Below are positions 17,308 through 44,628 of a stretch of 64,000 bases of DNA, piece after piece. Numbering within the stretch: position 1 is the first letter of the stretch; each line of letters starts with the position of its first letter. The stretch is from Haliotis rufescens (taxonomy: Eukaryota), in the NCBI RefSeq assembly GCF_023055435.1, contig NW_025963879.1, positions 13,392,001 to 13,456,000 of the forward strand, in the 5' to 3' direction. A model generated the notes under the pieces. The model was not told where the DNA came from, did no database searches, and saw nothing but the letters and a program-made list of their open reading frames with translations. The position numbers and the translations under genes were made by a program.

Positions 17308-18684
17308 ATGTCGATCCATTCCATCCGTTTGCTCTTCATTGTTTTAGTGACACACTCAACCAGTGGATATCCGAACAGTAGTATCCCTTTGGAGTGGTCA
17401 AACATTTGTCAATCCGCCATTAACCTTTCAAACGTAGTCATTTCCTGTCACGTGGGTGTTGACGATACATGGGATTTAGATCACTTCCGGAACTGGTCAG
17501 CCATATTGGATAATGACACCCTTGTGTCTCTGGATGTAATGTGTGAAACTAGAGCCAGTATCTGTCTCCCCTGGCCGTACCGAGCCAGACATCTGGACAC
17601 TCTGAAGATCAGGAATTGCATCAACACGTGCTATTTCTCATACTTCAACCGACCGGAAGTGCTGGATATCCCTGACTCCCTGAGGGTGTTTGAAGGATAT
17701 GGTATGACGGAACAGTTTAACGCTATGGATATGTTGTCTGTCGACCTGAAGAGTCTCCCTCCTGCATTGGAGTGTGGACCGATGTCCTTAGAGGTATTCA
17801 TCTACAGGAACACCAAGGCTGACATAATTTACCCCAAAGGTTTTGTGCCGAAAGGGGAGGACGAGGTTACTGACAATATCGTACAAACAGCGCGGGATAT
17901 AAACAAACTTAAACACGTGTGTAACTATAGAAATATGAAGGTCTATGACGCGAGTCAGAGACAAGACTCATCGTCTGTAGGTATATACGCCACTTTCATC
18001 AACTCTCGCTTCCCCAACCTGACAACACTAAACTACTCTTCCACGGAGATACAGGCGTTCCCTTCTATTTTATTATCATGGAAAGGACGCATTGAAAAAC
18101 TACAAATTTTGGATCTGTCCCATAATAACATCTCCCGTTTTGACCTCAGAGTTCAAAGTTTTGAGGCACCAATCAGAGTTATCAACTTAACGTACAACTC
18201 CATTCAAACAATAAAAGAGGCCGAGATCGGATCGTTTCAGTCTTCCGTTGCACAAGTTGTGGACGTGAGACAAAATCCCCTGAGATGCGACTGCGCTATG
18301 GCCGACTTCAGTAACTTTCTCAGAAGACATCCGACGCCAAAAGACGCAGGTCTTAGTCTTGACTACGAATATCTTTGGGATCTCACGTGCGTTGATCCAG
18401 TCAGTAAAAGAGGAAAACAAATTAGTCAATTCTCAAAGAAAGCGCTTTGCAACCTTGATGTCGTGAATGTGGCGTCCTACCAAGCCTTCGTCGCTGTTTT
18501 AGCTGTTGTTGTTGTCATTTTGGTCGCCTTACTCATATTAAGCATCCTTTACAGAGATAATGTTAAATTGCTCATCTCCCGAAGCTGCCGAATCCTGTGT
18601 GGCCGGTCCCCCATCAACGAACAAAACATCAATGATGGACGACACAAAGACGAATCCTCAAAATCTACCCAGGAGAAACTTTAG
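17308..18684 (+). CDS. TLR-cluster gene A: TLR-like LRR transmembrane protein lacking TIR (458 aa)
   Basis: Signal peptide, Cys-rich N block, LRRs (LNYSSTEI, LDLSHNNI, INLTYNSI), LRRCT NPLRCDC...LTC..P, TM AFVAVLAVVVVILVALLILSIL, about 40-aa tail. Acceptor ttttcag|atatc at 17232 matches that of gene C. First ATG is 17308. Confidence 0.9.
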   Translation: MSIHSIRLLFIVLVTHSTSGYPNSSIPLEWSNICQSAINLSNVVISCHVGVDDTWDLDHFRNWSAILDNDTLVSLDVMCETRASICLPWPYRARHLDTLKIRNCINTCYFSYFNRPEVLDIPDSLRVFEGYGMTEQFNAMDMLSVDLKSLPPALECGPMSLEVFIYRNTKADIIYPKGFVPKGEDEVTDNIVQTARDINKLKHVCNYRNMKVYDASQRQDSSSVGIYATFINSRFPNLTTLNYSSTEIQAFPSILLSWKGRIEKLQILDLSHNNISRFDLRVQSFEAPIRVINLTYNSIQTIKEAEIGSFQSSVAQVVDVRQNPLRCDCAMADFSNFLRRHPTPKDAGLSLDYEYLWDLTCVDPVSKRGKQISQFSKKALCNLDVVNVASYQAFVAVLAVVVVILVALLILSILYRDNVKLLISRSCRILCGRSPINEQNINDGRHKDESSKSTQEKL

Positions 18685-18999
18685 AAAATATCGATATATT
18701 TTGAGTGAGTGAGTTAGTATGGTTTTACTCCGCTTAATGCAATATTCCAGCAATTTAACGCAGGGGACACCGGAAAATTGGCTTCACACATTGAACCCAT
18801 GTGGGGAATCAAACCCGGGTCTTCGGCATGACGAGCCAATGCTTTAACCACGCGCCCAATATATGTTCAATGCTTATAGGTGTGAGCACACATCTACTAT
18901 TCACTGGAATAGTTGAAACTATTTGTAAGCTTCGTATATTCACTGTTGTAACAAGAGGAAATATTCAGTTAAAACACACACTGTTAGCTCCTGAGACTT

Positions 19000-19241
19000 A
19001 AACTGCCGGGGAAAAGAAAGTATACACTTGAAAATGGATTGTTTAAAGAATTACAAATGTTGTGAAACATTACTAGGCCTAAGACAGTCGCCGAATTACT
19101 GCAAACCTACGGTCCAAAACACAACAATGATACCATTAATCTTATCAAATGCATCAGCGTCGAATAACCATTTCTCTTTTATTTCATCTTAGCCAACATC
19201 AAACATATGCATGGTGTAAACTTTCTTTTGTCACGCAGTTT
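19000..19241. mobile_element. Tc1/mariner-like MITE (about 240 bp)
   Basis: TIR aaactgccgggcaaaagaaagtatacac. Further copies at 35881-36115, about 53548-53779, 58174-58386 and 61407-61643. Confidence 0.8.
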
Positions 19242-19800
19242 TATTCAGACTGATTATAGGATATGTCAGGTATGAAAAACAGCTGTACATTTTCTGTGTT
19301 TTATATTTTATGTGTCATTTAATTGGTGTTTTGATGGTGTGTGTGGGAAGGGTTGTGGGGTGTGGCAGGAATGTGTTGCTATAATTCTCTCTGAATTAAC
19401 TTCGTCTCCTGAAATGGCTTTTTCATACTGTTGGGGCCCAAATATTGGGGTCTTCTTTTTCTTAGCAAATTGGGAAATCTAAATTCTAAAATCGATCCTA
19501 TCAAGTCACGGATATTTTCATTAGATATTCACATCCATCAAAAAAGAAACTATCCGAATCGTTTAACCGATATATAATATGATCTGCCCTATTCGCTCAA
19601 TTTATTTTAACTTTTCTTATCGTTATTTGTCTGAGAGTTTTCAGCTTCACTTTCAGCGTTAATCGAGAGCGTTCGGGAATGCGCTAATCTACCTACACCA
19701 AATGGTTAACACAATAAAAAGTATTTCAACTCTTCGTATCGTTATCACTTATCTACCGACACCACGTGAGCTAAGAACACGATGCCCTATACACATCCAT

Positions 19801-19953
19801 NNNNNNNNNNNNNNNNNNNNNNNNNNNNNNNNNNNNNNNNNNNNNNNNNNNNNNNNNNNNNNNNNNNNNNNNNNNNNNNNNNNNNNNNNNNNNNNNNNNN
19901 NNNNNNNNNNNNNNNNNNNNNNNNNNNNNNNNNNNNNNNNNNNNNNNNNNNNN
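19801..19953. other. Assembly gap
   Basis: Run of N. Confidence 1.
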
Positions 19954-20824
19954 CAAACAATCACGCACACATATACACAATCACTCACACAAACACTCAC
20001 ATACATGTAAACACAACATTGTCAAGAGATACTGAAAAGAAATTAATACTTATTCAGTGACGGGCGGTGTTTCTATGCCTTATAAAACATCGTGTAGACG
20101 TTATCTAACAGTCCAACTGAAACAAGAAGTGAATTGCTGATGTGCAATACTAACTGCCGTGCCATATCCGTATACATATAGGGAAACCTACTGACGGTGT
20201 TAACAGTTTTGAATCAAATAAAACAATTAATAGTATTTAACTTTATTAGATAAGGATTTTAACCACATATGGATAAAACGTTCATCTTCAAGTAAACATA
20301 GTATGATACCTGTTTTTGAAAAATGCGCATTTCCTTACTTCCCTATATTTCTAACGTACAGCCACGTGCAAGTTATGCCTCCATGAAAAACATGAAATCA
20401 CACGGGGTAACAATGCAGCGACATCATAGATGAAGGAATGTAATACATGTTTGCGTTAAGCAATACAGGATCGATTTTAAATCGGGAATAAATACATTTT
20501 GTATGATATAACGACGTGTTACTATTAGTCCATGAGTCTCGGCTGAATTGTTCACGACAGTACCCAGTGCCCAGCTCAAAGAATGTCATGCCAACAGAGA
20601 TACTTAAGTAAAGGTCATCTGTATTCTGCATCTCAAGTCATCATGCCCCAGTTTTTGGCGTTGTGAGCTTTACATTAACTTTGTTTCATTATTTATTATT
20701 TCCGTTTTATACAAAGACATATTGTCTTTTTCCGAACGCAGGATCTGCCCCGACAATGCTACAATCAATTTACTGTGGATTGATGTTGGCATGCAATGCA
20801 ACCTTAGGCGTGCAGAAACCTAAG

Positions 20825-20970
20825 NNNNNNNNNNNNNNNNNNNNNNNNNNNNNNNNNNNNNNNNNNNNNNNNNNNNNNNNNNNNNNNNNNNNNNNNNNNN
20901 NNNNNNNNNNNNNNNNNNNNNNNNNNNNNNNNNNNNNNNNNNNNNNNNNNNNNNNNNNNNNNNNNNNNNN
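20825..20970. other. Assembly gap
   Basis: Run of N. Confidence 1.
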
Positions 20971-22214
20971 TCACACACCACTCCATCTCACCATTCCATC
21001 TCACACATGGGTAAACCCTATATCCATCTACCCTGTCGTCAAACTTCAGCGCAATTATTCATATACCACTTCATTTTACAAGCAGGTCCAGTCTGCATCC
21101 CTGTCTTCACAATTCCTTGCTGTTATTCAATGAATAAAAGCGACAAAACACTTCCCATAATAATAAGGACTCTCAGCCAAAAATCCATTGTACGATTCCA
21201 GTACCAGCATCAGCGACCTGGGAGTCTTTCGACAACTTACACGTTCCTACTGCTGAATGCTAGTTCCTACTGTTCTTACTGTGTTCCGTTGCATCACCAA
21301 TTCAATGCTAGTGCGACGTTAAATTGTAACTCACTTGCTGTGTTGTTGGAGAATGCCGCTGACATTTGTTAATGCATTCTCTACAGAAAACGTCACTGCC
21401 GCTAGCCTAGAAAGACCAAAGTGTAAATACTTTCCAATATTTTGCATGTTCGCTTTCTAGCAATTTTTAATGCTGACTGGTCAGTTGATGCGTCATAAAG
21501 TCATTGCGATATGACGTCACCAAATGTCCATGGCGTTGCGTATTGGTACCGTTACTTTATTTCGAAAACAGGCTGACGTCGGTGAAGTTCTCTTTGTTGC
21601 GATGACGTAATGCCGACGTTAAATGTAAACTCAGTCACTTCTTCATGTCCTCCCTTAAAATGACAATGAGTATGACAAAGAACATATATATTGTAAATGG
21701 GTTGAGACTTATAATATTAGTTCACTCGGGACAAACACTTCCTCTTTGCTCGTGGTTATTCTCGTCATAAGTAAAACACATTTATTTTACTGGCACATAT
21801 GCTCACATATTAATGTACCTCTTATACATGTGCCCAATGTCTTAAGTGAGACGACATAGCAACAACGTATAAACTACAAGTTGCTGCAACTGTTCCATCC
21901 AAATATCAAATAATATTTCCGTATAACTGTTTGTGGAATGCCAACACTATAAAATAGCAAAACTTGTTGGCAGGTTGAATACATAGCTAGATAATAATTC
22001 ATTAGTGGATCAACCGATTTATTTAACTATGCAAGGAACTACATTAATTGTTTAATACATCATTGTCATAACGGTAACAGCCTTTTGATTGGTCCCTGTC
22101 ATATATCTCCTGATTCTAACATTTGTCTACATCCTGTTCTAATATAAGTCATCCGGGTCACAGCTGTCAGCAGCAGGACACAAAGGGACGGTTGTCAGTT
22201 ATGTACGACCGAGC

Positions 22215-22740
22215 TGCGTTACTGAAGAAGCAATATTAATGTTCAGTTTCATGTTGAATATGTTTACGAAAATACTTATCCTTCACCTGATGTGCTGAAC
22301 ATAGGAATAGATGATGCGTTACTGCGATATAAGAAGGAAATATTAATCTTAAGTTTCATGTTGAATATGTTTACGAAAATACTTATCCTTCATCTGATGT
22401 GCTGAATATAGGAATAGGTGATGCGTTACTGCGATATAAGTAGGAAATATTAATGTTCAGTTTCATGCTGAATATGTTTACGAAAATACTTATCCTTCAT
22501 CTGATGTGCTGTATATACTAATAGGTGATGCGTTACTGCGATATAAGAAGGAAATATTAATGTTCAGTTTCATGTTGAATATGTTTACGAAAATACTTAT
22601 CCTTCACCTGATGTGCTGAATATAGGAATAGGTGATGCGTTACTGCGTTAGAAGAAGGAAATATTAATGTTCAGTTTCATGTTAAATATGTTTACGAAAA
22701 TACTTATTCTTCATCTGATGTGCTGAATATAGGAATAGGT
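22215..22740. repeat. 107-bp tandem repeat, about 5 copies
   Basis: tgcgttactg recurs at 22215, 22315, 22422, 22529 and 22636. Confidence 0.95.
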
Positions 22741-25546: not shown

Positions 25547-27481
25547 TTAACAAAGGTCATACTGTTCTGGGGGCTTTCTACAGATCTTAACGTCGATGTT
25601 CTCAGCATTGTTTCCAGGCGGGGGTACGTCTTTTGCGATGGAGGTCTTCTTTTTAGGTTTACTTTTGTCGGTTAATGAATACACGATTCTGTCCCAAAAA
25701 AGTTTGTCAGAGATGTGAATGTACGTCCATGTCTGCATGCAACGCCGAAAGTCCGCGTCAAGTTCACTCACAGGGATGTCCTCAAGGAGGACCAGAATCA
25801 GATGTTTCTTCTTCTCAATGAGACTCTGGTGGAAGGCGGTGCGGAACTCCATCAAACACCACTCGCTCTCCAGAAACTTCCTAGACAACACCAGGATAGT
25901 GTGTCTGCTTGCCTCAACGCTCTGACAAATGTTGTCAGCTATAGCGGCGCCAACTGCAAAGTCTCGCTGATGAAGACATAACCGGAAGTTATTTCCGTCA
26001 GGGAAACCACTCTCTAGTCGAGGGAGAAGGGTTTTCACAACCCATGTGGTGTCATGGTGACTGTAGGCCACAAAAGCATCGTATGTCTTATTGCTTGAGT
26101 GTTCAAATGACTGACATGGTAGAATAACGTTGCAGCGTGTAAAAGTCAAAATTCTTATTTCCTTTCTATATCGAACACAAAGTATCACGAAAATTAAGAA
26201 AATGACCACAGTTACACATATGGCTGATATTTGAGATATGTAGGCTGTCATATCGGTGGAACATAATATCTTCCGTGTGAACTCGCAGATCCTTTTACCT
26301 CGAAACTTCTCTGGAGTGACACATTCTAAGTCCCAGAGATATGCATAATCCCTGTTTATACCAGCTTCAGTTGTACTGCTATACTTTTGAAGATACATGC
26401 TGAAGTTCCCCATAGCACAGTCACACTGAAAGGGATTGTCTCTCACATTAATCACAACTCCGTCAACTTTTGAAAAAGATTCAATTTCCTTTTCTCCAAT
26501 TGTACGTATATCATTAAACCTGAGATCTATCATTCCAACATCTTGAGAGAGAAGGCTCGTGTCTCTTAATTCAAAACGGGAGATGTTATTATGAGAAAGG
26601 TCCAAAATTTGCAGCTTGTCGAAGTGGCGCCGCCAGACTGCCAGAATTGGGGGAAATACCTGCAACTCAGTATCTGAGAAATTTAGTATTCGAAGTTGGG
26701 GGAATCGTGAGTTGACTACACTTGAATAGATAAGGAGAGACGAAGCCCGAATCCGTTGACTTTTATCAAAGACTCTCATATTTTCATATTTGCATACATA
26801 ACCAAGATCATCCATATTGCGCGTGTTCTTCGTGATCGTGTCAGTAATGTTGAGGTCCTCAAGTTGTGGGTAATCTTCGCTGTCTTCGTCAAATAGGATT
26901 TTAAGCTGCTTGTGTCTGTAGATGAAGACTTCCAGATGCATTGGGCCACACACCATAGGAGGCGGTAAACTCTTTATGTCAATGGACAACATATCCAGTA
27001 GTTTCCTCTCCTCTGTCACATCATAACCTTCAAATATCTTCAGTGAGTCTTGGATATCCAACACTTCCGGTCGATTGAAGTCCGAGTAGTAGCAAGTATT
27101 GGTGCACCTGGTAACCCTCAACGTGTGCAGATACCCCGCTCTGTACGGCCAGGGAAGACAGATTCTTGTTCCATCCTCACAGACTATGTCCAGCGACACT
27201 AGGGTGTCCTTATCCAACACAACTGACCAGTTCCGGAAGTGATTGAAGTCCCACACATCCTCAACGTTCACATGACAATATATAGAGATAAATGATATGT
27301 TGGTTTTGTCGCTTGATGTCTTGCACATTGCCTTCCATTCATCTGGCATGATCATATTTCTCTTGAACGTTGGAGAGGGGGGACGTTTAAGAGGCATAAG
27401 GTCTTTACCATATGCAGTGTCAACTAATGACACACCAAGCATAACCATTGTCCAAAACCTGAAGTATATTCCTGATGACAT
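25547..27481 (-). CDS. TLR-cluster gene B: Toll-like receptor with short ectodomain (644 aa)
   Basis: Signal peptide from MSSGIYF, LRRs, LRRCT NPFQCDC, TM, TIR (YDAFVAYS, LHQRDFAVG, SEWCLMEF, FWDRI). Likely acceptor ttttag at 27671. Confidence 0.95.
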   Translation of the reverse strand: MSSGIYFRFWTMVMLGVSLVDTAYGKDLMPLKRPPSPTFKRNMIMPDEWKAMCKTSSDKTNISFISIYCHVNVEDVWDFNHFRNWSVVLDKDTLVSLDIVCEDGTRICLPWPYRAGYLHTLRVTRCTNTCYYSDFNRPEVLDIQDSLKIFEGYDVTEERKLLDMLSIDIKSLPPPMVCGPMHLEVFIYRHKQLKILFDEDSEDYPQLEDLNITDTITKNTRNMDDLGYVCKYENMRVFDKSQRIRASSLLIYSSVVNSRFPQLRILNFSDTELQVFPPILAVWRRHFDKLQILDLSHNNISRFELRDTSLLSQDVGMIDLRFNDIRTIGEKEIESFSKVDGVVINVRDNPFQCDCAMGNFSMYLQKYSSTTEAGINRDYAYLWDLECVTPEKFRGKRICEFTRKILCSTDMTAYISQISAICVTVVIFLIFVILCVRYRKEIRILTFTRCNVILPCQSFEHSSNKTYDAFVAYSHHDTTWVVKTLLPRLESGFPDGNNFRLCLHQRDFAVGAAIADNICQSVEASRHTILVLSRKFLESEWCLMEFRTAFHQSLIEKKKHLILVLLEDIPVSELDADFRRCMQTWTYIHISDKLFWDRIVYSLTDKSKPKKKTSIAKDVPPPGNNAENIDVKICRKPPEQYDLC

Positions 27482-28619: not shown

Positions 28620-31600
28620 TAATCATGAATCACAACTTAACAATGAAGTGAAGCATAAGTATCAAGTATAGCATGACATTGCAGTATATCATTGCCATAA
28701 ATAATAACTTAACAGCCAGGTATAACATTACCCTGAAGTATACCATAACCATCAGGTATAACATAGCCATGACGTATAACAGAACCATGAGGTACAATAT
28801 AGTCATGAAGTATAGCATACACATAAACATGATTACGGATGATAGCCTGGCATGTCGTGTACCATAACCATGTAGTATATCATAACCATGTAGTATATCG
28901 TAACCATGTAGTGTACCATAACCATATAGTATATCATAACTATACTGACGCCCAAAAGAATCTTTACCCGAGTTTGAAATCACTCTTGCTCAAAAACAAC
29001 AAAACATACATGCATGAAGTAAAGTGTATTGAGAAGATCAATATATCCACATAATCAACACTGAAAATGACAATCATACCGCGACCGAGAATGACGTCGG
29101 AGCCCCCCAAAGTTGTGTGTGGTACAAAACTCGAGCTTTCAGAATCATGGACAATAGGCAGAGTACATAAACAATCGCTCACGTTCAATAACAAGTCATT
29201 AGTAGCGTGTGTGACCACCAAATGCCTCAATACACGCAAAAACTCTTCGACGCACAGAAAAAGTCAGTCGTCTGATGAGGTCACGTGGGATTTGACGCCA
29301 TTCTTCTTGGAGGGCCAAGATCAGTTCTTGCCGGTTGGCTGGAGAGTGTGGTCGTTGTCGAACACGACGATCCATCAAGTCCCAGAGGTGATCTATGGGG
29401 GACATGTCGGGTGAGCGTGCAGGCCACGGCAGGACGTTGACGTTGTTGGCTGCGAGGAAGTAAGTGACAATTCTGGCTGTATGGGCTCTAGCGTAGTCTT
29501 GCTGATAAATGACACCACGTTGCTGCTTTTGGAGAAATGGCAGGACAACTGGACGAAGAATGTTATCCATGTAACGCTGAGCTGTCAAGTTTCCGTGAAC
29601 AATGACCAGCGGTGTCCTCTCCTGCCCACAGATCCCACCCCACACCATGACACTCCCTCCACCATATGGTACGACCTCCTGCGCGCAATACGCCACCGTT
29701 CGTTCACCCCTTCGGCGGTAAACACGTTGTCTTCCATCAGCCCTAAACATACAGAATCGACTTTCGTCAGTGAAGACAACCCTCTGCCAGTCACGTCGTT
29801 GCCAGCGTCGTACAGTCCGGGCCCATCTCAATCGCAGACGACGATGTTGCGCTGTCAGTAGCTGTCCTCTGTATGGCCTAAAAGCCCTGATTCAATGAGC
29901 CCTGAGTCTCCTGGCCACTGTTTGTCGACTAACCCTGTGACCTAAGCCTGTGTCGCCGATGACGTCACTGTCAGGAATCGATTTCGGAGGTGCAAGGTAC
30001 GCAAGTACCGGTCATCATTGGGCGTGGTCACCCAGGGTCTGCCTTTTCTTGGCCTGTCAGCGGTCCGCCGTGTCTGTCTGTAACGTTGCATCAAGTTGGT
30101 AACGGCAACACGGGAGCAACCGAAGGTTCGTGCAATATGGGCGTGGGTGGCTCCCATCTGTACCATACCCGTTCACGTTGTTCGACTGTGAGTCGTGGCA
30201 TTTCTTTTGTGTTTTTTATCACTCTGGATGTCTGACTTGCCGTTGCAATCGTTTTATACCCTTACCCGCACGTGCATTTGCAGTTGTCCGTGGTGAACGT
30301 GTTTTTCACTTTTTCGCGTGTTATCTCGCAAACATGTAACAGACGATTAACATTTTCTGCATACACTATTGTTGTATTTAGGTTATGTGTTTGAGATAGA
30401 CTTCATCGAAAAAAAATTTGTACTTTGTCTGAAATTTATATTTTCAGTTGGTAAAGTTTCTTTTGGACGTCAGTTGATGTATTGTACCATAACCATGTAG
30501 TATATCGTAACCATGTCGTATACCATAACCATGTAGTATATTGTAACCATGCAGTATATCATAACCATGTAGTATATCACAACTATGTAGTATATCGTAA
30601 CCATGTAGTATACAATAACCATGTAGTATATCATAACTATGTATTGTACCATAACTATGTAGTATATCATAACTATGTATTGTACCATAACCATGTAGTA
30701 TATCATAACCATGTAGTATATCATAACCATGTAGTATATCGTAACCATGTCGTATACAATAACCATGTAGTATATCATAACCATGTAGTGTACCATAACC
30801 ATGTAGTATATCATAACTATGTATTGTACCATAACCATGTAGTATAGCATAACCATGAAGTATATCATAACCATGTAGTATATCATAACTATGTAGTATA
30901 TCGTAACCATGTATTGTACCATAACCATGTAGTATATCGTAACTATGTATTGTACCATAACCATGTAGTATATAATAACTATGTATTGTACCATAACCAT
31001 GTAGAATAGCATAACCATGTAGTGTACCATAACCATGTAGTATATCGTAACCATGTAGTGTACCATAACCATGTAGTGTATTGTAACCATGAAGTATATC
31101 ACAGACATGTAGAATATTATAACCATAATGTAAATAATAGCCATGTAGTATACCATAATCAGGTTGAATATCATAACAATGTAGTACATCATAACCATAA
31201 AGTATATCATAGCCATGTAGTATATCATAAGTACGTAGTATATATCATGTACCATATCATAACCACAACCATAGCACAGCCATGTCGTATATCACAATCA
31301 TGTAGTGTATCCTACCTACCTAGTACATGTATATCGTAAACATGTAGTATATCATTGCAATGTAAATCATTTTAACGTTGTAGTATATCATACCCATATA
31401 GTGTAACATAACCTTGAAGCATATCATGTGCATGTGGTATAGCATAACTACATAGTATATCATAACCTTAAATTATATCATAGCCATGTGGTATATCATA
31501 ACTATCTAGCGTATTATAACCATGTTGTATATAGTAACTAAATAGTTTATGATAACCGTGTCGTGTAGCATAACAATGTAGTATATCATAACCATTTAGA

Positions 31601-31860
31601 ATATCATATCATATGATGTTTATCGTTACCATGTAGTATATCATAACCATGGTTTCGTTCGTCAAATACCAGAACTATTCACTCGTTTCATAAAATCGGT
31701 ATTACACGGGAGCTCGTTTAGTATTCTGTATGTATAATTTATCATAACCATGCAGTATATCTATAACTATGCAGTACATCATATCCATGTAGTATAACAT
31801 AAACATGAAGTATATCATAACCATGTAATTTATCATAACCATGAAGTATATCATAAACAC
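28620..31860. repeat. 18-bp minisatellite array 1 (gtagtataYcataaccat), interrupted by Tc1
   Basis: Visible units with degenerate edges. Same family as 39740-42140. Confidence 0.93.
28943..30475 (-). mobile_element. Defective Tc1 (DD34E-type) transposon 1
   Basis: TIRs actgacg(c/t)ccaaaagaa(t/a)ctttacc. Frameshifted transposase 30201-29199 with FTDESRF, QQDYARAH and SPDMSPID (catalytic E changed to D), ending GGHTRY. Confidence 0.95.
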
Positions 31861-33400: not shown

Positions 33401-33677
33401 CTGGAGATTACAAGAGCTCATTTCTCTTGAGAACACCCGGCTCATGAACTCAAAGATTCTGATATTGGCAGTAATGAAGGTACAAAACAAGAGTTAATGG
33501 TCTACTGTACGTCATTTCAGCATTGTTATTGTAGGATTGAGTTGAAAAAAATGTTTATTCATAAGGTAGACAAAGGTAACAAAAACTGAACTTCAAAATG
33601 GCCGTCATTTGTGATTTATTGTTAGGATATTTTTTTAAAACATGCTCAAAAACAAAAATGCTCTAATGATAAGACGG

Positions 33678-34435
33678 TCATGGTACAACAATGTTGAATC
33701 GTGTTAACGTCAGAATCCTTATTTCTTTCCTATATCTTACCATTCGTATTATGAAAACAGCCAAAATCATCATGATTAAACATATGGCTCATAGATATTA
33801 GAGATACGTAAGCTGCCATATCAGTGGAACATAGCAAATTCCGTGTGATCCTTTTACCTCGAAACTTCTCTGGGGTGAAACATTTTAAGTCCCAGAGATA
33901 TGCATACTTCCTGTTTATACCAGCTTCAGTTGTACTGCTATACTTTTGAAGATACATGCTGAAATTCCCCATACCACAGTCACACTGAAAGGGATTGTCG
34001 CCTACATTAATCAAGACTCCTTCAACTTTTGAAAAAGACGTCACTTCATTTTCTCTAATTGTACGTATATCATTAAACCTTAGATCTATCATGGCTCATG
34101 TCTCTTAATTCAAAACGGCATTCTTGCTCCACCCTCACAAACTAAATCCAGCGACACAAGGGTGTCATTATTCAACACAACTGACCAGTTCCGGGAGAGA
34201 TTTAAGTCCCATACACCCTCAACGTACACGAGAAAATGGTGATAAACGATTTGTTGGTTTTCTCGTTTGAGTTCTTGCACATTGCCTTCCATTCATCTGA
34301 CATGATCATACATGTATTTCTACCGATCGTAGGAGAGGGAAGGATTTCAAATAATTTAGGTCAAAGGTTTTCACCAGCTTCTATAGTAATTAAAGACACA
34401 GTTATGATACCATTTGTCCAAATAGGTGATGACAT
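33678..34435 (-). pseudogene. TLR-cluster gene D: B-like pseudogene with no TIR
   Basis: MSSPIW..., WDLNLSRNWSVVLNNDTLVSLD, MIDLRFNDIRTI...NPFQCDC...RYRKEIRILTLTRFNIVVP*. Has stops, frameshifts, a 20-bp deletion and a ~580-bp deletion (junction about 34119) relative to B. Confidence 0.92.
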
Positions 34436-34857
34436 GACGATTTTTTAACATATATTTTCATAAAATATATTTGATCACAGTCGTCTTTCCAACTGTAATT
34501 AGTGTGGGTCTGTCCGTACCGTCGATCCAATGTGAAGAAAGCTGGTGTTTACACAGACCACCCTCTGCGAGGACCCTTGAAGATCCGGGGTAGAATAGGT
34601 CTTCAGCAACCCAAGCAGTCTTTATCCATTCTTGACAACTGACATTGTATTGAAGAGCCAAGTTCAGTGTATGCCCGGCTGTGTTGATGGTATGCTTAGT
34701 TGGAAACCAAAAAAAATGTACTACTTTCAATACAAAAAAAGAAAACATTCTTCCTCTAAAAATATGCCCAAGAAGAATATATTTTTTTATGCAGCCTATA
34801 ATCGTCCTTATGTAAGTGAGTGAGTTGGGTTTAACGCCGCTTTCAACTGTTATATCA

Positions 34858-36237: not shown

Positions 36238-37740
36238 TACTGAACAACAAAAGTTGCTGTGACATTGATTAAGATTTAATGCAAAGTTATCTTTTTTACC
36301 AAATCTGAAACAATTCGGTTTGCAACAGATGAAAGACTATTGTAAGTGTTGAAATGGTTTAATTTGCCATACTGACTTCAGAAAATCCATGATTTCATAA
36401 AAAACATGAACATGCCAAAATGTCAATTTACAAATCAATAGCGTGTGTGTCCACCTCTGGTTGCGATGCAAGCAACACATCTTCGTCTCATGGAATGGAC
36501 CAGGCGTCGCACAAAGCCCTGTCGGATATCTGTCCATATGTGCTGGAGCATGTTTCGAAGTTTCTGGAGTGTCTGTGGAACACGTGGTTGACGTCGAAGG
36601 CGCCGATCCATCTCATCCCACATGTGCTCGATTGGTGAGAGATCAGGGGAACGAGCCGGCCAGGGGATGACATTCACGTTGTTTTGTTGAAGTGAATCCT
36701 GAACAAGTCGAGCAATATGAGGCCGGGCGTTGTCACGTTGAAAGGTAATGCCATGACGACGCAAAATCGGTAGAACAACAGGGACGATGATCTCGTCGCG
36801 GTAGCGCTGTCCATTGAGATTTCCCTCTACCACTATCAAACGAGTCCTCTGTCTTGCTGTAATCCCACCCCATACCAAAACGCTACCGCCCCCGAACCGA
36901 TCTTCTTCCACGACACAATGATTGACGTAACATTCACCTCGACGTCGGTACACTCGAATCCGTCAATCGCTGTGGCTGAGGTGAAAATGAGTGAGTGAAT
37001 AGAACTTGTCCCCAGTGCATGGCCGTCCAGCGTAGACGCTGTCTGCACCACTGTAGACGTGCTTGACGGTGGTTTCCTGTCAAAGTTGGACGTCTAGTGG
37101 GGCTTCTGGCGACAATCCCTCTACATCTGAGGCGACGACGTACGGTTTGTGAAGATATTCGTCGAAGGCCAGGGATTCTTCCTGCAGTCACTGTTGCTTG
37201 CAGGAATCTATTTCGTAGGTGTGTTGTTCGAATCCAGTTGTCTTGTCGATTATTGGTTACGCGTGGCCTGCCACTCCGAGGATGGTCTCTGACTGCATTC
37301 GTCTGTTGCCAACGTTGCCATAAACACCGAATGGTGTTTCTGTGGACGTTAAATTGTCTTGCAACATCACGTTGACTCGATCCTGCTTCAAGCATACCAA
37401 TGGCTCGCAGACGCTCATTTTCGGACAGGCGTGGCATTTCGTAATGATGAATAATTGCGTAATTTTGTTGTTTTTCTGAGTGGTTGTTGTCAGCACGATG
37501 CTAAACAATGCATATGGAATCCCGTTAACGCACATGTTTTCATACCCATTCTTGGGTAGTGAAATGTATTGGGCTTGCACACGTAAAAGTCAACTTTTGC
37601 ATGGAATGCATGCTTTTCTGTAGCAGTTGCGTTTTTGTGACTTGATTCCATACATGTACTACAATATTGAAAACCAAACTTTACTTGTTTGAAAAATACA
37701 CTTAAATATTGGTGTCAAAAAAAGATTTTGTTGTTGAGTA
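36238..37740 (-). mobile_element. Defective Tc1 transposon 2 (different subfamily)
   Basis: TA TSDs and TIR tact(g/c)aacaacaaaa. Transposase 37437-36435 (MPRLSENER...FQRDNARPH..SPDLSPIEH..GGHTRY) is frameshifted near the first catalytic D. Confidence 0.95.
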
Positions 37741-37799
37741 TACTTCAGCTCTATTCTTCGATAATAAGACTTATATCCCTTCCAGGGAGGAGTGTGTTC

Positions 37800-38043
37800 C
37801 ACGATCCGGACTAATGCTAATTTATAGTGCTGGTTCACTGAGATACCATGCCGCAGCTTAACATTAATACCAGACTCAGACACAGTATAACAGTCCTTGT
37901 TTTAGTCCCTTTATGCCGAGCGCCAGACAGGGTAACAACAAGTACCATCTTTAAACGTCTTTTGGTATGACGAGGCCGGGGATCGGACCCCGGACCTTCC
38001 GCTCTCCGGGAGGACGCTCTACCACTAGACCACAGAGGCGGTC
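37800..38043 (-). mobile_element. tRNA-derived SINE family 2 (Meta/MESC-like core)
   Basis: gaccgcctc..TGGTCTAGTGG...GGTYCGATCC followed by cataccaaaagac...ccctgtctggcgctcggca. Copies at 49187-49547 and about 57814-57950; 3' fragment at about 31868-32005. Confidence 0.8.
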
Positions 38044-38829: not shown

Positions 38830-39230
38830 CTGGTGACGGGCGGCAGTGCTGGGACATGGAACCGTGCGGCAATTCTGAGACGTTGTCGCATGCGTCACTA
38901 GTGGGACATGGTGACGTTCGTCAATGCTGGGACCTGGAGACGTGCGTCAGTCATGGGACATGGTGACTTGCGTCAATGCTGGGACCTGGTGACGTGCGTA
39001 AATGCTGGGACCTGGTGACGTGCGTCAGTGCTGGGACCTTGTGACGTGCGTCAATGCTGGGACCTGGTGGCATGCGTCAATGCTGGGACCTGGTGACGTG
39101 CGTCAATGCTGGGCGGTGGTGACGTGCGTCACTGCTGGGACTTGGTGACGTGCGTCAGTCCTGGAACGTGGTGACGTGCGTCAATGCTGGGACCAGGTGG
39201 CATGCGTCATTCCTGGGACATGGTGACATG
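38830..39230. repeat. 26-bp GC-rich minisatellite, about 15 units
   Basis: Unit gctgggacctggtgacgtgcgtcaat. Confidence 0.93.
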
Positions 39231-39739
39231 GCCACTGCCAAATCAAACGCGAAATGTCTTCGTCGTTTTCACAAAACTAAAATAAACGTAACAATGTGCC
39301 ATTTTAGATTAAATTCACCTACCTTTTGTATAGAACTTAGAGCTACATTGTATTTTATCTTATCAAAATCAGTTAAAAATGTTTCAAATGTTAACTTTCA
39401 AGATTTTAAATCCCAAACTTGCTCGTGTACATCCCTTACCCTTTCTTAAAACGACCAAGAATTATCTCACCGATAACTTCCCACAATAACCAAATACCTC
39501 AGACAATATCTATTAAAATCATCCCTCATTAATGTCACCCAACTAACCCTAACTTGCCAGAATTTTTACAAAGTAGACAAAAGAAGTTGTTATCCACAAA
39601 CGTTGCCTTTACAGTATTAAAGAAGTTGTTATACATAAATTGTGTCGACTTTGTCATCCGTCACCTTCTAAGTAATGCCTATCAAACAAATAATATTTTT
39701 ACAGATCAAACTTAACATATAATTTACCATCAACTATCA

Positions 39740-42140
39740 CGCGACCACGAAAAATACCACAACCATGAAATATACCATAGCCATGTGCTGGATCTTAACC
39801 ATGTAGTATATCCTAACAATGTAGTATACCATAACCATGTAGTTTATCCTAACAATGTAGTATACCATGACCATGTAGTATATCATAACCATGTAGTATG
39901 TCATAACCATGTAGTATACCATGACCATGTAGTATACCATAACCATGTAGTATATCCTAACAACGTAGTATACCATAACCATGTCGTATATCCTAACAAT
40001 GTAGTATACCATGACCATGTAGTATATCATAACCATGTAGTATGTCATAACCATGTAGTATACCATGACCATGTAGTATACCATAACCATGTAGTATATC
40101 CTAACAACGTAGTATACCATAACATTGTCGTATATCCTAACAATGTAGTATACCATGACCATGTAGTATAGCATAACCATGTAGTATGTCATAACCATGA
40201 AGTATACCATGAACATGTAGTATATCCAAACAATGTAAAATATCATAACCATGTAGTATACCATGACCATTAAGTATATCCTAACAATGTAGTATACCAT
40301 AACCATGTAGTATACCATGACCATGTAGTATACCATAACCATGTAGTATACCATAACCATGTAGTATATCCTTACAATGTAGTATACGATAACCATGCAG
40401 TATACTATAACCATGTAGTATACGATAACCATGCAGTATACCATAACCATGTAGTATACCATAACCATGTAGTATACCATAACCATGTAGTATACCATAA
40501 CCATGTTGTATACCATAACCATGTAGTATGTCATAACCATGTAGTATACCATATCCATGTAGCATATCATAACCATGTAGTATACCATAACCATGTAGTA
40601 TACCATAATCATGTAGTATGTCATAACCATGTAGTATACCATAACCATGTAGTATGCCATAACCATGTAGTATACCATAACCATGTAGTATACCATAACC
40701 ATGTAGTATGTCATAACAATGTAGTATACCATAACCATGTAGTATACCATGACCATGTAGTATGTCATAACCATGTAGTATACCATAACCATGTTGTATA
40801 CCATAACCATGTAGTATGTCATGACCATGTAGTATATCATAACCATGTAGTATACCATAACCATGTAGTATATCATAACCATGTAGCATATCATAACCAT
40901 GTAGTATACCATACCCATGTAGTATACCATAACCATGTAGTATACCATAACCATGTAGTATGTCATAACCATGTAGTATACCATAACCATGTAGTATACC
41001 ATAAGTATGTAGTATACCATAAGCATGTAGTATGTCATAGCCATGTAGTACACCATAACCATGTAGTATATCATAACCATGTAGTATACCATAACCATGT
41101 AGTATACAATGACCATGTAGTTTAACCTTACAATGTAGTATATCGTAACCATGTAGTATACCATAACAATGTAGTATACCATAACCATGTAGTATACCAT
41201 AACCATGTAGTATACCATGACCATGTAGTATACCATAACCATGTCGTATGTCATAACCATGTAGTATACCATAACCATGTAGTATACCATGACCATGTAG
41301 TATGTCATAACCATGTAGTATACCATAACCATGTAGTATACCATAAGTATGTAGTATACCATAAGCATGTAGTATGTCATAGCCATGTAGTACACCATAA
41401 CCATGTATATCATAACCATGTAGTATACCATAACCATGAAGTATACCATAACCATGTAGTATACCATGAACATGTAGTTTAACCTTACAATGTAGTATAC
41501 CATAACCATGTAGTATACCATAACCATGTAGTATACCATAACCATGTGGTATACCATAACCATGTAGTATACCATGACCATGTAGTTTAACCTTACAATT
41601 TAGTATATCGTAACAATGTAGTATACCATAACAATGTAGTATGCTATAACCATGTAGTATGCCATAACCATGTAGTATGTCATAACCATGTAGTATACCA
41701 TAACCATGTAGTATACCATAACCATGTAGTATACCATGACCATGCAGTTTCACCTTACAATGTAGTATACCATAACCATGTAGTATACCATAACCATGTA
41801 GTATACCATAACCATGTAGTATACCATAACCATGTAGTATACCATGACCATGTAGTTTAACCTTACAATGTAGTATATCGTAACCATGTAGTATACCATA
41901 ACAATGTAGTATGCTATAACCATGTAGTATGCCATAACCATGTAGTATACCATAACCATGTAGTATACCATAACCATAAAGCATATTATAGGTATGTAGT
42001 ATACCATAACCATGTAATATGTCATAACCATAAAGCATATTATAAGTATGTAGTATACCATAACCATGTAGTATGGCATAACTATGTAGTATATCCTAAC
42101 AATGTAGTATATCATAACCATAAAGCATATTGTAAGTATG
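39740..42140. repeat. 18-bp minisatellite array 2, about 130 units
   Basis: Unit gtagtataccataaccat, same orientation as array 1. Confidence 0.97.
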
Positions 42141-42594
42141 TAGTGTCACATTGTTACAATCGATCTCACACTCACACCATGTGTATGTATGTATTCGATG
42201 GTGCAAGGTACTTGGGTTAAATCTGATGAGTGAGTTTTGGTTTATGCCGCTTTCAGCATTAAATCACCAATGACATCCAAATCCAACATGAAACGAATGT
42301 GGGTAACCGATGTACCCGAATGAAGCAACTGGGCGAACCCACCTTCCGTGCTAATCATACATAAAACTCGTGAACGAAAATGTTTCTTTAATGAAAACAT
42401 TAAAAAACAATTTATCAAATACTAACTGTTCATTTCTATTATTCAGCAAATATAATAATTTTTGAATTCCCACTAATGATCCTTGGTTCGTTGAAAGTAG
42501 CCCGTAAACCAACAAAAGAGACAACACAGAGAGAGCATAAGCGTGTACTTATAGTCTCAGTCATTTTCAGTATATGAAAGTACAAACAGTGGAA

Positions 42595-44628
42595 TCAAAA
42601 ATCAGTGATATGGTCAGCTGACCTTGTTTCCTTTTCAATATACTGGCAAAGATCATATTGTTCTGGTAGGTTGGTGTTGACGTGATCAAAAGAGTCACTT
42701 GCACTGGTCTGTTTATTGTTGATGTCAGAGCATTCGTTTTTTGCAGCGATTGATTTCTTTTTCGGTTTACTTTTGTCGGTTAACGAATACACGATTCTAT
42801 CCCAAAAAAGTTTGTCAGAGATGTGAATGTACGTCCATGTCTGCATACAACGCCGAAAGTCCGCGTCAAGATCATTCACGGGGATGTCCTCAAGGAGGAC
42901 CAGAATCAGATGTTTCTTCTTCTCAATGAGACTCTGGTGGAAGGCGGTGCGGAACTCCATCAAACACCACTCGCTCTCCAGAAACTTCCTAGACAACACC
43001 AGGATAGTGTGTCTGCTTGCCTCAACGCTCTGACAAATGTTGTCAGCTATAGCGGCGCCAACTGCAAAGTCTCGCTGATGAAGACATAACCGGAAGTTAT
43101 TTCCGTCAGGGGAACCACTCTCTAGTCGAGGGAGGAGAGTTTTCACAACCCATGTGGTGTCATGGTGACTGTAGGCCACAAAAGCGTCGTATGTCTTATT
43201 GCTTGAGTTTTCAATCGGTTGACATGGAAGAAGAATATTGAAACGCGTGAAAGCAAGAATGGTTATCTCCTTCCTATATCTTGTCGTTACAATAATAGTG
43301 ATTATCAAAATTATTACGATTACACACAGGACTGATATCTGAGCGACATAGGCAGTCGTATCCGTTGAACACAACAACTCTTTTGAAAGGCCTCTGATCG
43401 CTTTTCCTCGAAACCTTTGAGGGGTAACACATTTCAAGTCCCAAAGATAGCTGTAGTTCATGTTTATATTCTCACCTTGATCTTTTTTTATACTCTTCTG
43501 GAGGTAGTCACTAAAGTTTGCCATAGCACAATCACATCTAAAAGGATTGTTTCTTATGTCAATTACTGCGCCTTTTGTTTTTGAAAAAGAATTTATTTCT
43601 TGGATGCCTATAGTGCGAATGTTATTATACCTGAGGTTTATTAGACCAGTACCTTGAGAAATAAGACTCATATCTCTCAAGTCAAAACGAGAGATATTAT
43701 TATGAGAGAGGTCCAAAGTTTGCAGCTTCTCAAAGCGGAGTCTCCATGTTTCCAAAATTGAAGGATAAACTTGTAATTCTGTGTCTGAGAAGTTTAGTGT
43801 TCTGAGCTGGGGAAATAGAGAGTTGATGAATGTAGAATATATTAAGGCAACCGCCGTATCAGTCCTTTGGCTCAAATCATAAACCTTCATATTTCTATAG
43901 CGACATACATGTTCAAGACTGTTGATATCCCGCGTCGTTTGTACAAACTCGTCAGTTACGGAGTCCTCTTGCTTTGGAAAGAATCCCTCTGGATATATAA
44001 AATCTGTCGTGGTGTTCCTGTAGATGAATACCTCTAAGGACATCGGTCCACACTCCAAGGCAGGAGGGAGACTCTTCAGGTCGACAGACAACATATCCAT
44101 AACGTTAAACTGTTCAGTCACACCATATCCTTCAAACACCCTCAGGGAGTCAGGGATATCCAGCACTTCCGGTCGGTTGAAGTCTGAGAAGTAGCACGTG
44201 TTGATGCAATTCCTGATCTTCAGAGTATCCAGATGTCTGGCTCGGTACGGCCAGGGGAGACAGGCACTGGCTCCAGTTTCACACATTACATCCAGAGACA
44301 CAAGGGTGTCATTATCCAATATGGCTGACCAGTTCCGGAAGTGATTTAGATCCCATACATCATCTACTGTCACCGTACACGAAATGGATACAAAAGAGGA
44401 GTTTAGATGCGAGTCCTGCCTACACGTTGTCTCCCACTCAGTGGGGAGGTGTCGGCTTGTTCCCAATATAGACACATGTGAGACATTAGTTGTCGAATCA
44501 CCAATCGACATGGCATATGATAGTTTAAAGACACTTAGAATTGCCAAATTGAATATTATGAGGATTAAACGGGACGACATCCCTGTGCCAGACAAGAGAG
44601 CTTGAAAATTGAACAGTTTCTCCATCAT
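42595..44628 (-). CDS. TLR-cluster gene C: Toll-like receptor with short ectodomain (677 aa, or 661 aa from ATG 44580)
   Basis: Signal peptide, Cys-rich N block, LRRs, LRRCT NPFRCDC, TM and complete TIR. Acceptor ttttcag|atatc at 44757. Confidence 0.95.
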   Translation of the reverse strand: MMEKLFNFQALLSGTGMSSRLILIIFNLAILSVFKLSYAMSIGDSTTNVSHVSILGTSRHLPTEWETTCRQDSHLNSSFVSISCTVTVDDVWDLNHFRNWSAILDNDTLVSLDVMCETGASACLPWPYRARHLDTLKIRNCINTCYFSDFNRPEVLDIPDSLRVFEGYGVTEQFNVMDMLSVDLKSLPPALECGPMSLEVFIYRNTTTDFIYPEGFFPKQEDSVTDEFVQTTRDINSLEHVCRYRNMKVYDLSQRTDTAVALIYSTFINSLFPQLRTLNFSDTELQVYPSILETWRLRFEKLQTLDLSHNNISRFDLRDMSLISQGTGLINLRYNNIRTIGIQEINSFSKTKGAVIDIRNNPFRCDCAMANFSDYLQKSIKKDQGENINMNYSYLWDLKCVTPQRFRGKAIRGLSKELLCSTDTTAYVAQISVLCVIVIILIITIIVTTRYRKEITILAFTRFNILLPCQPIENSSNKTYDAFVAYSHHDTTWVVKTLLPRLESGSPDGNNFRLCLHQRDFAVGAAIADNICQSVEASRHTILVLSRKFLESEWCLMEFRTAFHQSLIEKKKHLILVLLEDIPVNDLDADFRRCMQTWTYIHISDKLFWDRIVYSLTDKSKPKKKSIAAKNECSDINNKQTSASDSFDHVNTNLPEQYDLCQYIEKETRSADHITDF

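What the first reader, a model, noticed from the sequence alone, without database searches (positions are those of the whole stretch)
17308..44628. Mosaic TLR cluster: domain-sized sequence exchange among four otherwise divergent paralogues
Seen: gene C is a chimera in similarity terms. Its N-terminal block is nearly identical to A and its TIR is nearly identical to B, while its signal peptide, LRRs, TM and tail differ from both at many synonymous and non-synonymous sites. A and pseudogene D both lack the TIR. Both tracts are about 2-3% diverged (10 mismatches each), suggesting similar age. Established: interlocus gene conversion shapes some immune clusters, for example mammalian TLR1/TLR6 TIR homogenisation and paired receptors such as Siglec-11/16. 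Inference: this cluster behaves as a modular system in which recognition and signalling modules are exchanged separately, giving an activating/decoy pair (C/A) with matched N-terminal domain and a pair (B/C) with matched output.
Basis: partly seen in the sequence, partly recalled or inferred. Interest (0 to 1): 0.85.

Follow-up and report, generated by a model that had tools for sequence, protein, structure and literature searches.

The report
Gene conversion patches in abalone TLRs
Three anciently duplicated Toll-like receptor genes in an abalone genome keep two short internal blocks almost identical by repeatedly copying DNA from one gene to another. This process is well known in vertebrate TLRs but apparently undescribed in molluscs, and here one partner has no signalling domain.

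Summary
Gene C (42595-44628, -) shares a 336-nt block with TIR-less gene A (10 mismatches) and a 445-nt block covering the whole TIR domain with gene B (10 mismatches). Elsewhere the three genes are saturated at silent sites.

Inside the tracts dS is 0.06-0.09 and 94-96% of conserved amino acids use the same codon, against 44-53% outside. No permutation approaches the observed scores.

Orthologues from three other Haliotis species show clean A, B and C clades in the middle of the ectodomain. In the N-terminal block, A and C instead group by lineage (concerted versus orthology site patterns 11:0, 10:0 and 6:0). The conversion is therefore recurrent, and its 3' end varies between species.

One B/C event ran from C to B after the split from H. 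cracherodii. C is thus a hub or donor, not simply a chimera.

Fragment D is a B-like pseudogene without a recent tract. The assembly gaps lie in non-coding DNA between A and B.

The mechanism matches mammalian TLR1/TLR6 and avian TLR2A/B. The activating/decoy reading is untested.

First readers of this scan noted similar TLR patchworks on other pieces of this genome.

The parts
17308..18684 (+). Gene A. Intact single-exon TLR-like gene of 458 aa with a signal peptide, a short LRR ectodomain, a TM helix and a cytoplasmic tail of about 45 aa. It has no TIR domain.
   Evidence: ORF. Pfam finds weak LRR hits only and no TIR. Intact TIR-less orthologues with the same C-terminal end exist in H. cracherodii (P0051) and H. 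asinina (P0008), plus a partial one in H. rubra (P0050).
17480..17815 (+). A-side copy of the A/C conversion tract (N-terminal LRR block, from the HFRNWS motif to the FIYRNT motif).
   Evidence: 336 nt with 10 mismatches to C 44345-44010. dS is 0.056. Identical codons are used at 96% of conserved residues.
19801..19953 (.). Assembly gap in intergenic DNA between A and B.
   Evidence: Run of N. No TLR-like coding nearby. Not filled or looked up.
20825..20970 (.). Second assembly gap in intergenic DNA between A and B.
   Evidence: Run of N. The only ORF crossing it consists of X residues and is spurious.
25547..27481 (-). Gene B. Full-length single-exon TLR of 644 aa with an LRR ectodomain, a TM helix and a TIR domain.
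   Evidence: ORF. Pfam TIR hit with E 6e-19. Identical to the annotated protein P0055.
25656..26100 (-). B-side copy of the B/C conversion tract. It covers the whole TIR domain.
   Evidence: 445 nt with 10 mismatches to C 43208-42764, including a 231-nt perfect run. dS is 0.09. Codon identity is 94%. The C-type HHDTTW motif is absent from B orthologues of three other species.
33630..34444 (-). Pseudogene D. B-like fragment with an internal deletion of about 582 nt, at least three frameshifts, stop codons and no TIR.
   Evidence: B nt 142-359 and 942-1412 align at 82% and 80%. Frames and stops were read. One segment, about 33849-33999, is 95% identical to B (151 nt, 7 mismatches) and may be an older B/D patch.
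42595..44628 (-). Gene C. Full-length single-exon TLR of 677 aa and the partner shared by both tracts.
   Evidence: ORF. Pfam TIR hit with E 3e-19. The AF2 model shows an LRR solenoid, a TM helix and a TIR domain. The TIR is closest to the TLR1/2/6/10/15 TIRs. The H. cracherodii orthologue P0001 is 96% identical.
42764..43208 (-). C-side copy of the B/C TIR tract (C aa 474-622).
44010..44345 (-). C-side copy of the A/C N-terminal tract (C aa 95-207).
   Evidence: This is the best-predicted part of the ectodomain model, with pLDDT of about 90-96.

Best explanation
A, B and C are old paralogues that duplicated before the Haliotis radiation. They sit in one small cluster of intronless TLR genes.

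Recurrent interlocus (ectopic) gene conversion is non-reciprocal copying of a few hundred bases during recombinational repair. It keeps two internal patches homogenised:
- The N-terminal LRR block is homogenised between C and the TIR-less gene A. These two genes are inverted and about 26 kb apart.
- The whole TIR domain is homogenised between C and B. These two genes have the same orientation and lie about 15 kb apart.

The rest of each gene (signal peptide, central LRRs, LRRCT, TM, tail) diverges freely.

Shown here: exchange rather than constraint, patch-like tracts with sharp ends, recurrence in several lineages, variable tract ends, and a C-to-B direction for one recent event.

Inferred:
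- The tracts persist because conversion is tolerated, and self-reinforcing, where the paralogues must keep the same interface. For the TIR that means common adaptors. For the N block it means a common ligand, partner or dimer surface.
- Conversion is selected against, or fails for lack of homology, in the specificity-determining middle of the ectodomain.
- A may modulate C as a membrane-anchored, non-signalling relative.
For: Within the genome:
- Tract coordinates and mismatch counts.
- dS of 0.056 and 0.090 inside the tracts against saturated values outside. B against C in the same N block gives dS 0.98, so the block is not constrained at the DNA level.
- Permutation tests give 0 of 5000, also on third codon positions alone.
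- Identical codons at conserved residues: 96% and 94% inside against 44% and 53% outside. These are the same figures used to argue for conversion in vertebrate TLR1/6 and TLR2A/B.
- There is no similarity in the non-coding flanks, so the tracts are not remnants of a recent segmental duplication.
- No closer donor exists elsewhere in the 1.33-Gb genome.

Across species:
- The mid-block tree gives A, B and C orthologue clades with support 100/100, 100/100 and 89/99.
- The N-block tree mixes A and C by lineage. Within-species A/C identity is 92-95%, against 81-83% between own and H. asinina orthologues.
- Concerted versus orthology site patterns in the N block are 11:0, 10:0 and 6:0, against 2:46, 3:24 and 2:37 in the mid block. 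Fisher p values run from 3e-10 to 3e-6.
- An AU test rejects A-orthologue and C-orthologue monophyly in the N block.
- The tract's 3' end lies at about aa 207 in own and H. cracherodii and at about aa 230 in H. rubra.
- Own B has the C-type HHDTTW motif, unlike B in three other species.
Against: - Orthologue evidence is at protein level only.
- At protein level the TIR is so conserved (91-100% among all Haliotis B, C and D) that only one site shows a concerted pattern. Recurrence is therefore demonstrated for A/C, but for B/C only in this genome plus the own versus H. cracherodii difference.
- The AU log-likelihood difference (about 66 over 111 columns) is large, and the groups were named after I had seen a tree. 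I give it little weight on its own.
- Elevated GC3 in the tracts is not specific evidence. TIR regions of most other TLR paralogues in this genome also have higher GC3 than their ectodomains.
- Nothing bears on function.
Confidence: 0.88

Rival explanations
1. Selection-maintained paired receptor system. A is a decoy or co-receptor whose ligand-binding N block is kept matched to the signalling receptor C. B and C are kept matched in output. Modules are exchanged as functional units.
For: - A is an intact TIR-less, membrane-anchored gene. It is conserved in H. cracherodii and H. asinina with the same short tail, and a partial H. rubra orthologue exists.
- A/C matching is renewed independently in several lineages while the block itself keeps evolving (81-86% between lineages).
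- The B/C tract coincides with the TIR domain to within about 6 residues.
Against:
- Homology-limited neutral conversion predicts the same pattern.
- The N tract is a piece of a continuous LRR solenoid, not an autonomous module.
- The exchange homogenises sequence. It does not shuffle diverse modules.
- This reading does not compete with gene conversion as the mechanism.
Confidence: 0.25
2. C arose recently as a chimeric gene by domain shuffling or unequal crossing-over between A-like and B-like genes.
For: In similarity terms C combines an A-like and a B-like block.
Against: - C orthologues with their own distinct mid-block clade exist in all four species.
- Both tracts are internal patches flanked on both sides by saturated divergence. 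One crossover cannot produce that.
- One event ran from C to B.
Confidence: 0.04
3. Assembly or polishing artefact: C or its tracts are mis-assembled from A and B reads.
For: - The scaffold contains two gaps.
- Reads could not be examined.
Against: - The H. cracherodii assembly shows the same mosaic at protein level. The H. asinina and H. rubra assemblies show the same A/C mosaic, and H. asinina also the near-identical B/C TIR. Each carries its own lineage-specific substitutions shared by A and C.
- The gaps are intergenic and more than 1 kb from any gene.
- Each tract carries 10 real differences.
Confidence: 0.02
4. Extreme purifying selection, including on codons or an embedded nucleic-acid signal, without any exchange.
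For: The TIR protein sequence is very conserved across Haliotis.
Against: - Silent-site divergence drops about 20-fold exactly at the tract ends.
- B, which shares the same N block, is at dS 0.98 from C.
- Lineage-specific residues are shared by A and C.
Confidence: 0.02

Closest known systems
Mammalian TLR1/TLR6 gene conversion (Kruithof et al. 2007, PMC2077338)
   Same: - Tandem TLR paralogues whose signalling end is kept near-identical by independent conversion events in many species.
- The ligand-specific ectodomain diverges.
- The diagnosis rests on paralogues being more alike than orthologues, and on codon identity.
   Different: - There the tract is about 900 nt and spans LRR16-19, the C-terminal cap, the TM and most of the TIR. 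Here it is 445 nt and confined to the TIR, with the TM and juxtamembrane regions divergent.
- This case is a mollusc.
- The same gene has a second tract with a different partner.
Avian TLR2A/TLR2B and TLR1A/TLR1B conversion (Huang et al. 2011, PMC3125219)
   Same: - TLR2A/B are converted in both the N-terminal and C-terminal regions, leaving a divergent central ectodomain. That is the same constant-variable-constant mosaic.
- Identical-codon fractions are 96-99% against 56-66%, like the 94-96% against 44-53% found here.
   Different: - In birds both tracts link the same two full-length genes.
- Here the two tracts of C link it to two different paralogues, one of which has no TIR.
- The tracts here are several-fold shorter.
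Paired activating/inhibitory receptors with converted ectodomains (Siglec-11/Siglec-16 type; from general knowledge, not tested here)
   Same: A signalling and a non-signalling (or differently signalling) family member keep a matched N-terminal extracellular block through gene conversion.
   Different: - It is a different protein family (Ig-type lectins).
- In that system opposite signalling motifs and shared ligands are demonstrated. Neither is shown for A and C.
RP105/CD180, the TIR-less TLR4 homologue that inhibits TLR4 signalling (PMC9675479, PMC8369417)
   Same: A membrane-anchored TLR paralogue with an LRR ectodomain and a short tail without a TIR. It is a plausible model for what gene A does.
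   Different: - RP105 is not reported to be kept matched to TLR4 by gene conversion.
- No functional data exist for A.

Membership tests
Toll-like receptor (type I LRR-TM-TIR receptor) | C-terminal cytoplasmic TIR domain | tested here: met
   B and C hit Pfam PF01582 with E 6e-19 and 3e-19. The TIR of the C model matches the TLR1/2/6/10/15 TIR crystal structures with TM-scores of 0.64-0.80. A has no TIR hit and is therefore TLR-like, not a TLR in the strict sense.
Toll-like receptor (type I LRR-TM-TIR receptor) | Extracellular LRR solenoid with cysteine caps, followed by a single TM helix | tested here: met
   - Pfam LRR hits are weak and below the cut-off.
- The AF2 model shows a short solenoid at aa 60-420 and a helix at 424-450.
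- Foldseek matches TLR8, TLR2, TLR1 and TLR4-VLR ectodomains and small LRR receptors.
- Cysteines are invariant across 34 homologues.
Interlocus gene conversion / concerted evolution of TLR paralogues (TLR1/6 type) | Paralogues within a species are more alike than orthologues between species in the tract, and the reverse holds outside it | tested here: met
   - A/C N block: identities, trees, site patterns of 11:0 against 2:46, and the AU test.
- B/C TIR: inconclusive at protein level, with only one informative site.
- Own B carries a C-type motif that B of three other species lacks.
Interlocus gene conversion / concerted evolution of TLR paralogues (TLR1/6 type) | Silent-site divergence and codon choice homogenised inside the tract only | tested here: met
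   dS is 0.056 and 0.090 inside against saturated values outside. Identical codons are 96% and 94% inside against 44% and 53% outside. Third-position permutation gives 0 of 5000.
Interlocus gene conversion / concerted evolution of TLR paralogues (TLR1/6 type) | Internal patch with divergent sequence on both sides (not a crossover product or a recent duplication) | tested here: met
   Sharp ends on both sides of both tracts. There is no similarity in the flanking DNA.
Interlocus gene conversion / concerted evolution of TLR paralogues (TLR1/6 type) | Physical linkage of the partners | tested here: met
   - All lie within 27 kb of one scaffold. Two gaps between A and B leave the exact distance and orientation of A unverified.
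Paired activating/decoy receptors | Matched extracellular block plus unequal signalling capacity | tested here: met
   The N block is 97% identical at nucleotide level. C has a TIR and A has none.
Paired activating/decoy receptors | Shared ligand or direct interaction, co-expression, and antagonistic or cooperative effect on signalling | not testable with these tools

The most novel reading that the evidence does not exclude
A and C form an invertebrate TLR 'paired receptor'. A conserved TIR-less, membrane-anchored paralogue has its N-terminal LRR block kept matched to a signalling TLR by selection-maintained, recurrent gene conversion. It therefore tracks the same ligand or dimer interface as a decoy or co-receptor. 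The signalling TIR is separately kept matched to a third paralogue. This would be a partner-specific, two-module concerted-evolution network not described for any TLR cluster.
Probability: 0.22. Interest if true: 0.75.

Novelty: new variant of a known kind. Interest (0 to 1): 0.5.

Why it matters
Partial gene conversion is the accepted explanation for the mosaic evolution of vertebrate TLR1-family genes. I found no report of it for mollusc TLRs in the searchable literature. Those families are greatly expanded, and their phylogenies and 'orthologue' names are usually built on whole sequences or on TIR domains.

Conversion is recurrent here. TIR homogenisation also appears in another cluster of this genome. 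TIR-based trees and duplication dates for mollusc TLRs will therefore be systematically misleading.

The A/C pair also gives a concrete, testable candidate for a TIR-less regulator whose recognition end is tied to a signalling receptor.

Tried and rejected
No orthologue DNA could be fetched, so cross-species dS, GENECONV and synteny checks were not done.
- Complex prediction (C ectodomain 61-421 with A ectodomain 27-382) was busy on six tries and was never run.
- GC-biased conversion was considered as supporting evidence and dropped. GC3 is 0.57-0.61 in the tracts against 0.37-0.48 in the mid block. However, B's unconverted N block and the TIRs of most unrelated TLR paralogues are equally GC3-rich.
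- A donor elsewhere in the genome was sought and not found. The next relatives are 33-34% identical in protein.
- The two 55-aa JGI 'members' of A's cluster (P0052, P0053) are unrelated sequences. A metagenome scan for abalone DNA was therefore not attempted.
- Polarity of the A/C exchange could not be inferred, because all four species are homogenised.
- H. cracherodii P0005 was first taken for the orthologue of D. This was rejected: own D is B-like, and P0005 is A/C-like at its N end and C-like from the LRRCT onwards.


Full report
**What is there**

The window is part of a 1.33-Gb abalone (Haliotis) genome, contig C101. The closest public proteins come from H. cracherodii.

Between 17.3 and 44.6 kb lie three intact single-exon TLR-type genes and one fragment:
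- A: 17308-18684 +, 458 aa.
- B: 25547-27481 -, 644 aa.
- C: 42595-44628 -, 677 aa.
- D: about 33630-34444 -.

B and C have a Pfam TIR domain (E about 1e-19). A has only weak LRR hits and a tail of about 45 aa after its TM helix.

An AlphaFold model of C was built from 34 homologues and has a mean pLDDT of 74. It shows a short LRR solenoid (aa 60-420), a TM helix (424-450) and a TIR domain. The TIR superposes on the TLR1, TLR2, TLR6, TLR10 and TLR15 TIR crystal structures. The ectodomain matches TLR and small LRR-receptor ectodomains.

The own-genome search finds dozens of other TLR genes. None is closer than 33-34% protein identity, so these four sequences are a closed subfamily.

**The gaps**

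The two N runs (19801-19953 and 20825-20970) lie in non-coding DNA. They start 1.1 kb downstream of A and end 4.6 kb from B. No TLR-like coding abuts them, and the one ORF crossing a gap is made of X residues.

The gaps affect neither the genes nor the tracts. 

**Check of the observation**

- A 17480-17815 matches C 44345-44010: 336 nt, 10 mismatches.
- B 26100-25656 matches C 43208-42764: 445 nt, 10 mismatches.

The ends are abrupt. Mismatches occur every 2-3 nt outside and every 30-70 nt inside. The B/C tract contains a perfect run of 231 nt.

Shuffling alignment columns never comes near the observed segment scores. They are 246 against at most 34, and 355 against at most 42, in 5000 shuffles. 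The result holds when only third codon positions are used.

**Exchange or constraint**

Nei-Gojobori dS is 0.056 in the A/C tract and 0.090 in the B/C tract. Every flanking block has pS of 0.69-0.85, which is saturated.

B carries the same N block as A and C but is at dS 0.98 from both. The DNA of that block is therefore not intrinsically constrained.

Among residues conserved between the partners, 96% (A/C) and 94% (B/C) use the identical codon inside the tracts, against 44% and 53% outside. This is the criterion, with nearly the same numbers, that Huang et al. used for vertebrate TLR1-family conversion.

The non-coding flanks of A, B and C share nothing beyond dispersed repeats. The tracts are therefore patches inside old genes, not leftovers of a recent duplication.

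**Orthologues**

Protein searches and cluster look-ups gave these orthologues:
- H. cracherodii: A, B and C, plus a fourth gene, P0005.
- H. asinina: A, B and C.
- H. rubra: A (partial), B (low quality) and C.
- Patella sequences served as outgroups.

Trees were made separately for the three blocks defined by the tracts.

Mid ectodomain: this block gives orthologue clades for A (100/100), B (100/100) and C (89/99). A/C identity is about 50%, so the duplications predate the divergence of these species.

N block: A and C do not separate. Within-species A/C identity is 95% (own), 92% (H. cracherodii), 92% (H. asinina) and 92% (H. rubra). Own A against H. asinina A is 83%, and own C against H. asinina C is 81%.

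Four-sequence site patterns make this explicit. 'Concerted' sites are those where the paralogues are alike within a lineage and the lineages differ. 'Orthology' sites are the reverse.

| Comparison | N block (concerted:orthology) | Mid block |
|---|---|---|
| own vs H. asinina | 11:0 | 2:46 |
| own vs H. rubra | 10:0 | 3:24 |
| H. asinina vs H. rubra | 6:0 | 2:37 |
| own vs H. cracherodii | 0:2 | 0:108 |

Fisher p values run from 3e-10 to 3e-6, and an AU test rejects monophyly of the A or the C orthologues in this block. I give the AU figure little weight on its own.

A/C conversion has therefore happened independently in at least three lineages. The last event in the own lineage is about as old as, or older than, the split from H. 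cracherodii.

The 5' end of the homogenised block sits at the HFRNWS motif in all species. The 3' end lies near aa 207 in own and H. cracherodii and near aa 230 in H. rubra.

**The TIR**

At protein level the TIR is 91-100% identical among all Haliotis B, C and P0005 sequences. Trees and site patterns are therefore uninformative, with one concerted site.

Two facts still bear on B/C. The first is the silent-site evidence in this genome, given above. The second concerns polarity. Own B reads HHDTTW at the start of the TIR, like every C. B of H. cracherodii reads HIDSAW, and B of H. asinina and H. rubra reads HMDSEW.

At least one event therefore copied C into B after the split from H. cracherodii, and the 5' end of the tract differs between sister species. 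C is the common partner and, at least once, the donor. Calling C 'the chimera' is not justified. Polarity of the A/C exchange cannot be recovered, because all species are homogenised.

**D and the fourth gene**

D is a B-like pseudogene:
- B nt 142-359 and 942-1412 align at about 80-82%.
- There is a 582-nt internal deletion, at least three frame changes and several stops.
- Nothing remains beyond the juxtamembrane region.

D has no near-identical tract with A or C. Its LRRCT part is closer to B than the rest, with 151 nt at 95%, about 33849-33999. This may be an older B/D patch or may reflect uneven constraint.

D is not the counterpart of H. cracherodii P0005. That protein is A/C-like at its N end, only 65% identical to C in the mid block, and almost identical to C from the LRRCT through the TM and TIR. 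This is a further and longer mosaic in the sister species, with no counterpart in this assembly.

**Generality**

In another TLR cluster of this genome (contig C124, loci L014-L025), the TM+TIR block has pS of 0.16-0.36 for all pairs. The ectodomains range from pS 0.12 to a saturated 0.83. In one pair (L015/L017) the TIR is more diverged than the ectodomain.

First-reader notes of this scan describe similar patchworks on other pieces of the genome. TIR homogenisation thus looks like a general property of abalone TLR arrays.

**Mechanism and interpretation**

The shown facts fit interlocus gene conversion of 0.3-0.5-kb heteroduplex tracts during recombinational repair. Conversion works between inverted (A/C) as well as direct (B/C) repeats.

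Why the tracts stay where they are is inference. Two causes are possible:
- Conversion needs local homology, so it reinforces itself in blocks that were already alike.
- Selection removes conversions that overwrite the specificity-determining middle of the ectodomain.

It holds that A is a decoy or co-receptor tied to C's recognition end, with the outputs of B and C kept equal. A is intact and TIR-less in H. cracherodii and H. asinina as well as here, and its N block is repeatedly re-matched to C while continuing to evolve. Nothing here tests binding, expression or signalling, however, and neutral homology-limited conversion predicts the same pattern. I put this reading at about 0.2-0.25.

**Comparison with what is known**

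The B/C tract is the mollusc analogue of mammalian TLR1/TLR6, where independent conversions in nine species cover LRR16-19, the cap, the TM and most of the TIR.

The constant-variable-constant mosaic is known from avian TLR2A/B, which are converted in both the N- and C-terminal regions around a divergent centre.

Three things differ here:
- The tracts are several-fold shorter, and the TIR tract excludes the TM.
- The two tracts of one gene have different partners.
- One partner has no TIR. That recalls paired receptors such as Siglec-11/16 (general knowledge) and the TIR-less TLR4 homologue RP105.

Searches of the held literature found no report of gene conversion in mollusc TLRs. A subscription paper on Haliotis TLR repertoires (Zou et al. 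2023, cited in PMC12521104) could not be read.

**Limits**

An assembly artefact is nevertheless very unlikely. The H. cracherodii assembly shows the same mosaic. H. asinina and H. rubra show the same A/C mosaic, each with its own lineage-specific substitutions shared by A and C.

**Verdict**

The mechanism, recurrent partial gene conversion, is well supported (0.88). The functional 'modular activating/decoy system' is unproven. This is a new variant of a known kind, of moderate interest.

Noticed in passing
L014-L025 (own genome, contig C124, about 11.87-12.08 Mb): In a second TLR cluster the TM+TIR block has pS of 0.16-0.36 for every pair, while ectodomain pS ranges from 0.12 to 0.83. For L015/L017 the TIR is more diverged than the ectodomain. 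TIR-limited exchange looks general in this genome.
   Followed up: partly
H. cracherodii protein P0005 (no counterpart in the window): A fourth TIR-bearing cluster member in the sister species. It is A/C-like at its N end, 65% identical to C in the mid block, and nearly identical to C from the LRRCT through the TM and TIR. This is a longer mosaic tract. No orthologue was found in this assembly. Whether one is hidden in the gaps is unknown, and I did not look.
   Followed up: partly
window 33849-33999 (-): Within pseudogene D, a 151-nt stretch is 95% identical to B. The rest of D is 75-82% identical. It may be an older B/D conversion patch or may reflect uneven constraint.
   Followed up: partly
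window 30477-31651 and 39754-42121: Two long arrays of the same 18-nt minisatellite unit (65 and 132 copies) lie just downstream of D and of C. A further short stretch of the same repeat lies near 29020-29346. They give rise to the long spurious ORFs at 30470-31255 and at 39737-42038.
   Followed up: no
window 29199-29831 (-) and 36435-37437 (-): Two Tc1/mariner-type transposase remnants (Pfam DDE_3 and HTH_Tnp_Tc3_2) lie between the TLR genes. The second is split into two overlapping frames.
   Followed up: partly
window 8456-10651 and 46368-49124: Large minisatellite arrays flank the cluster. One has a 40-nt unit with 55 copies, the other 28-29-nt units with about 97 copies. Both show strong strand composition skew.
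   Followed up: no
own-genome TLR paralogues L009-L035: GC3 is higher in the TIR-coding part (about 0.48-0.60) than in the ectodomain part (about 0.39-0.47) in 23 of 24 TLR genes examined; L013 is the exception, and in L011 and L012 the two values are nearly equal. High GC3 in the tracts is therefore not specific evidence of biased conversion.
   Followed up: partly
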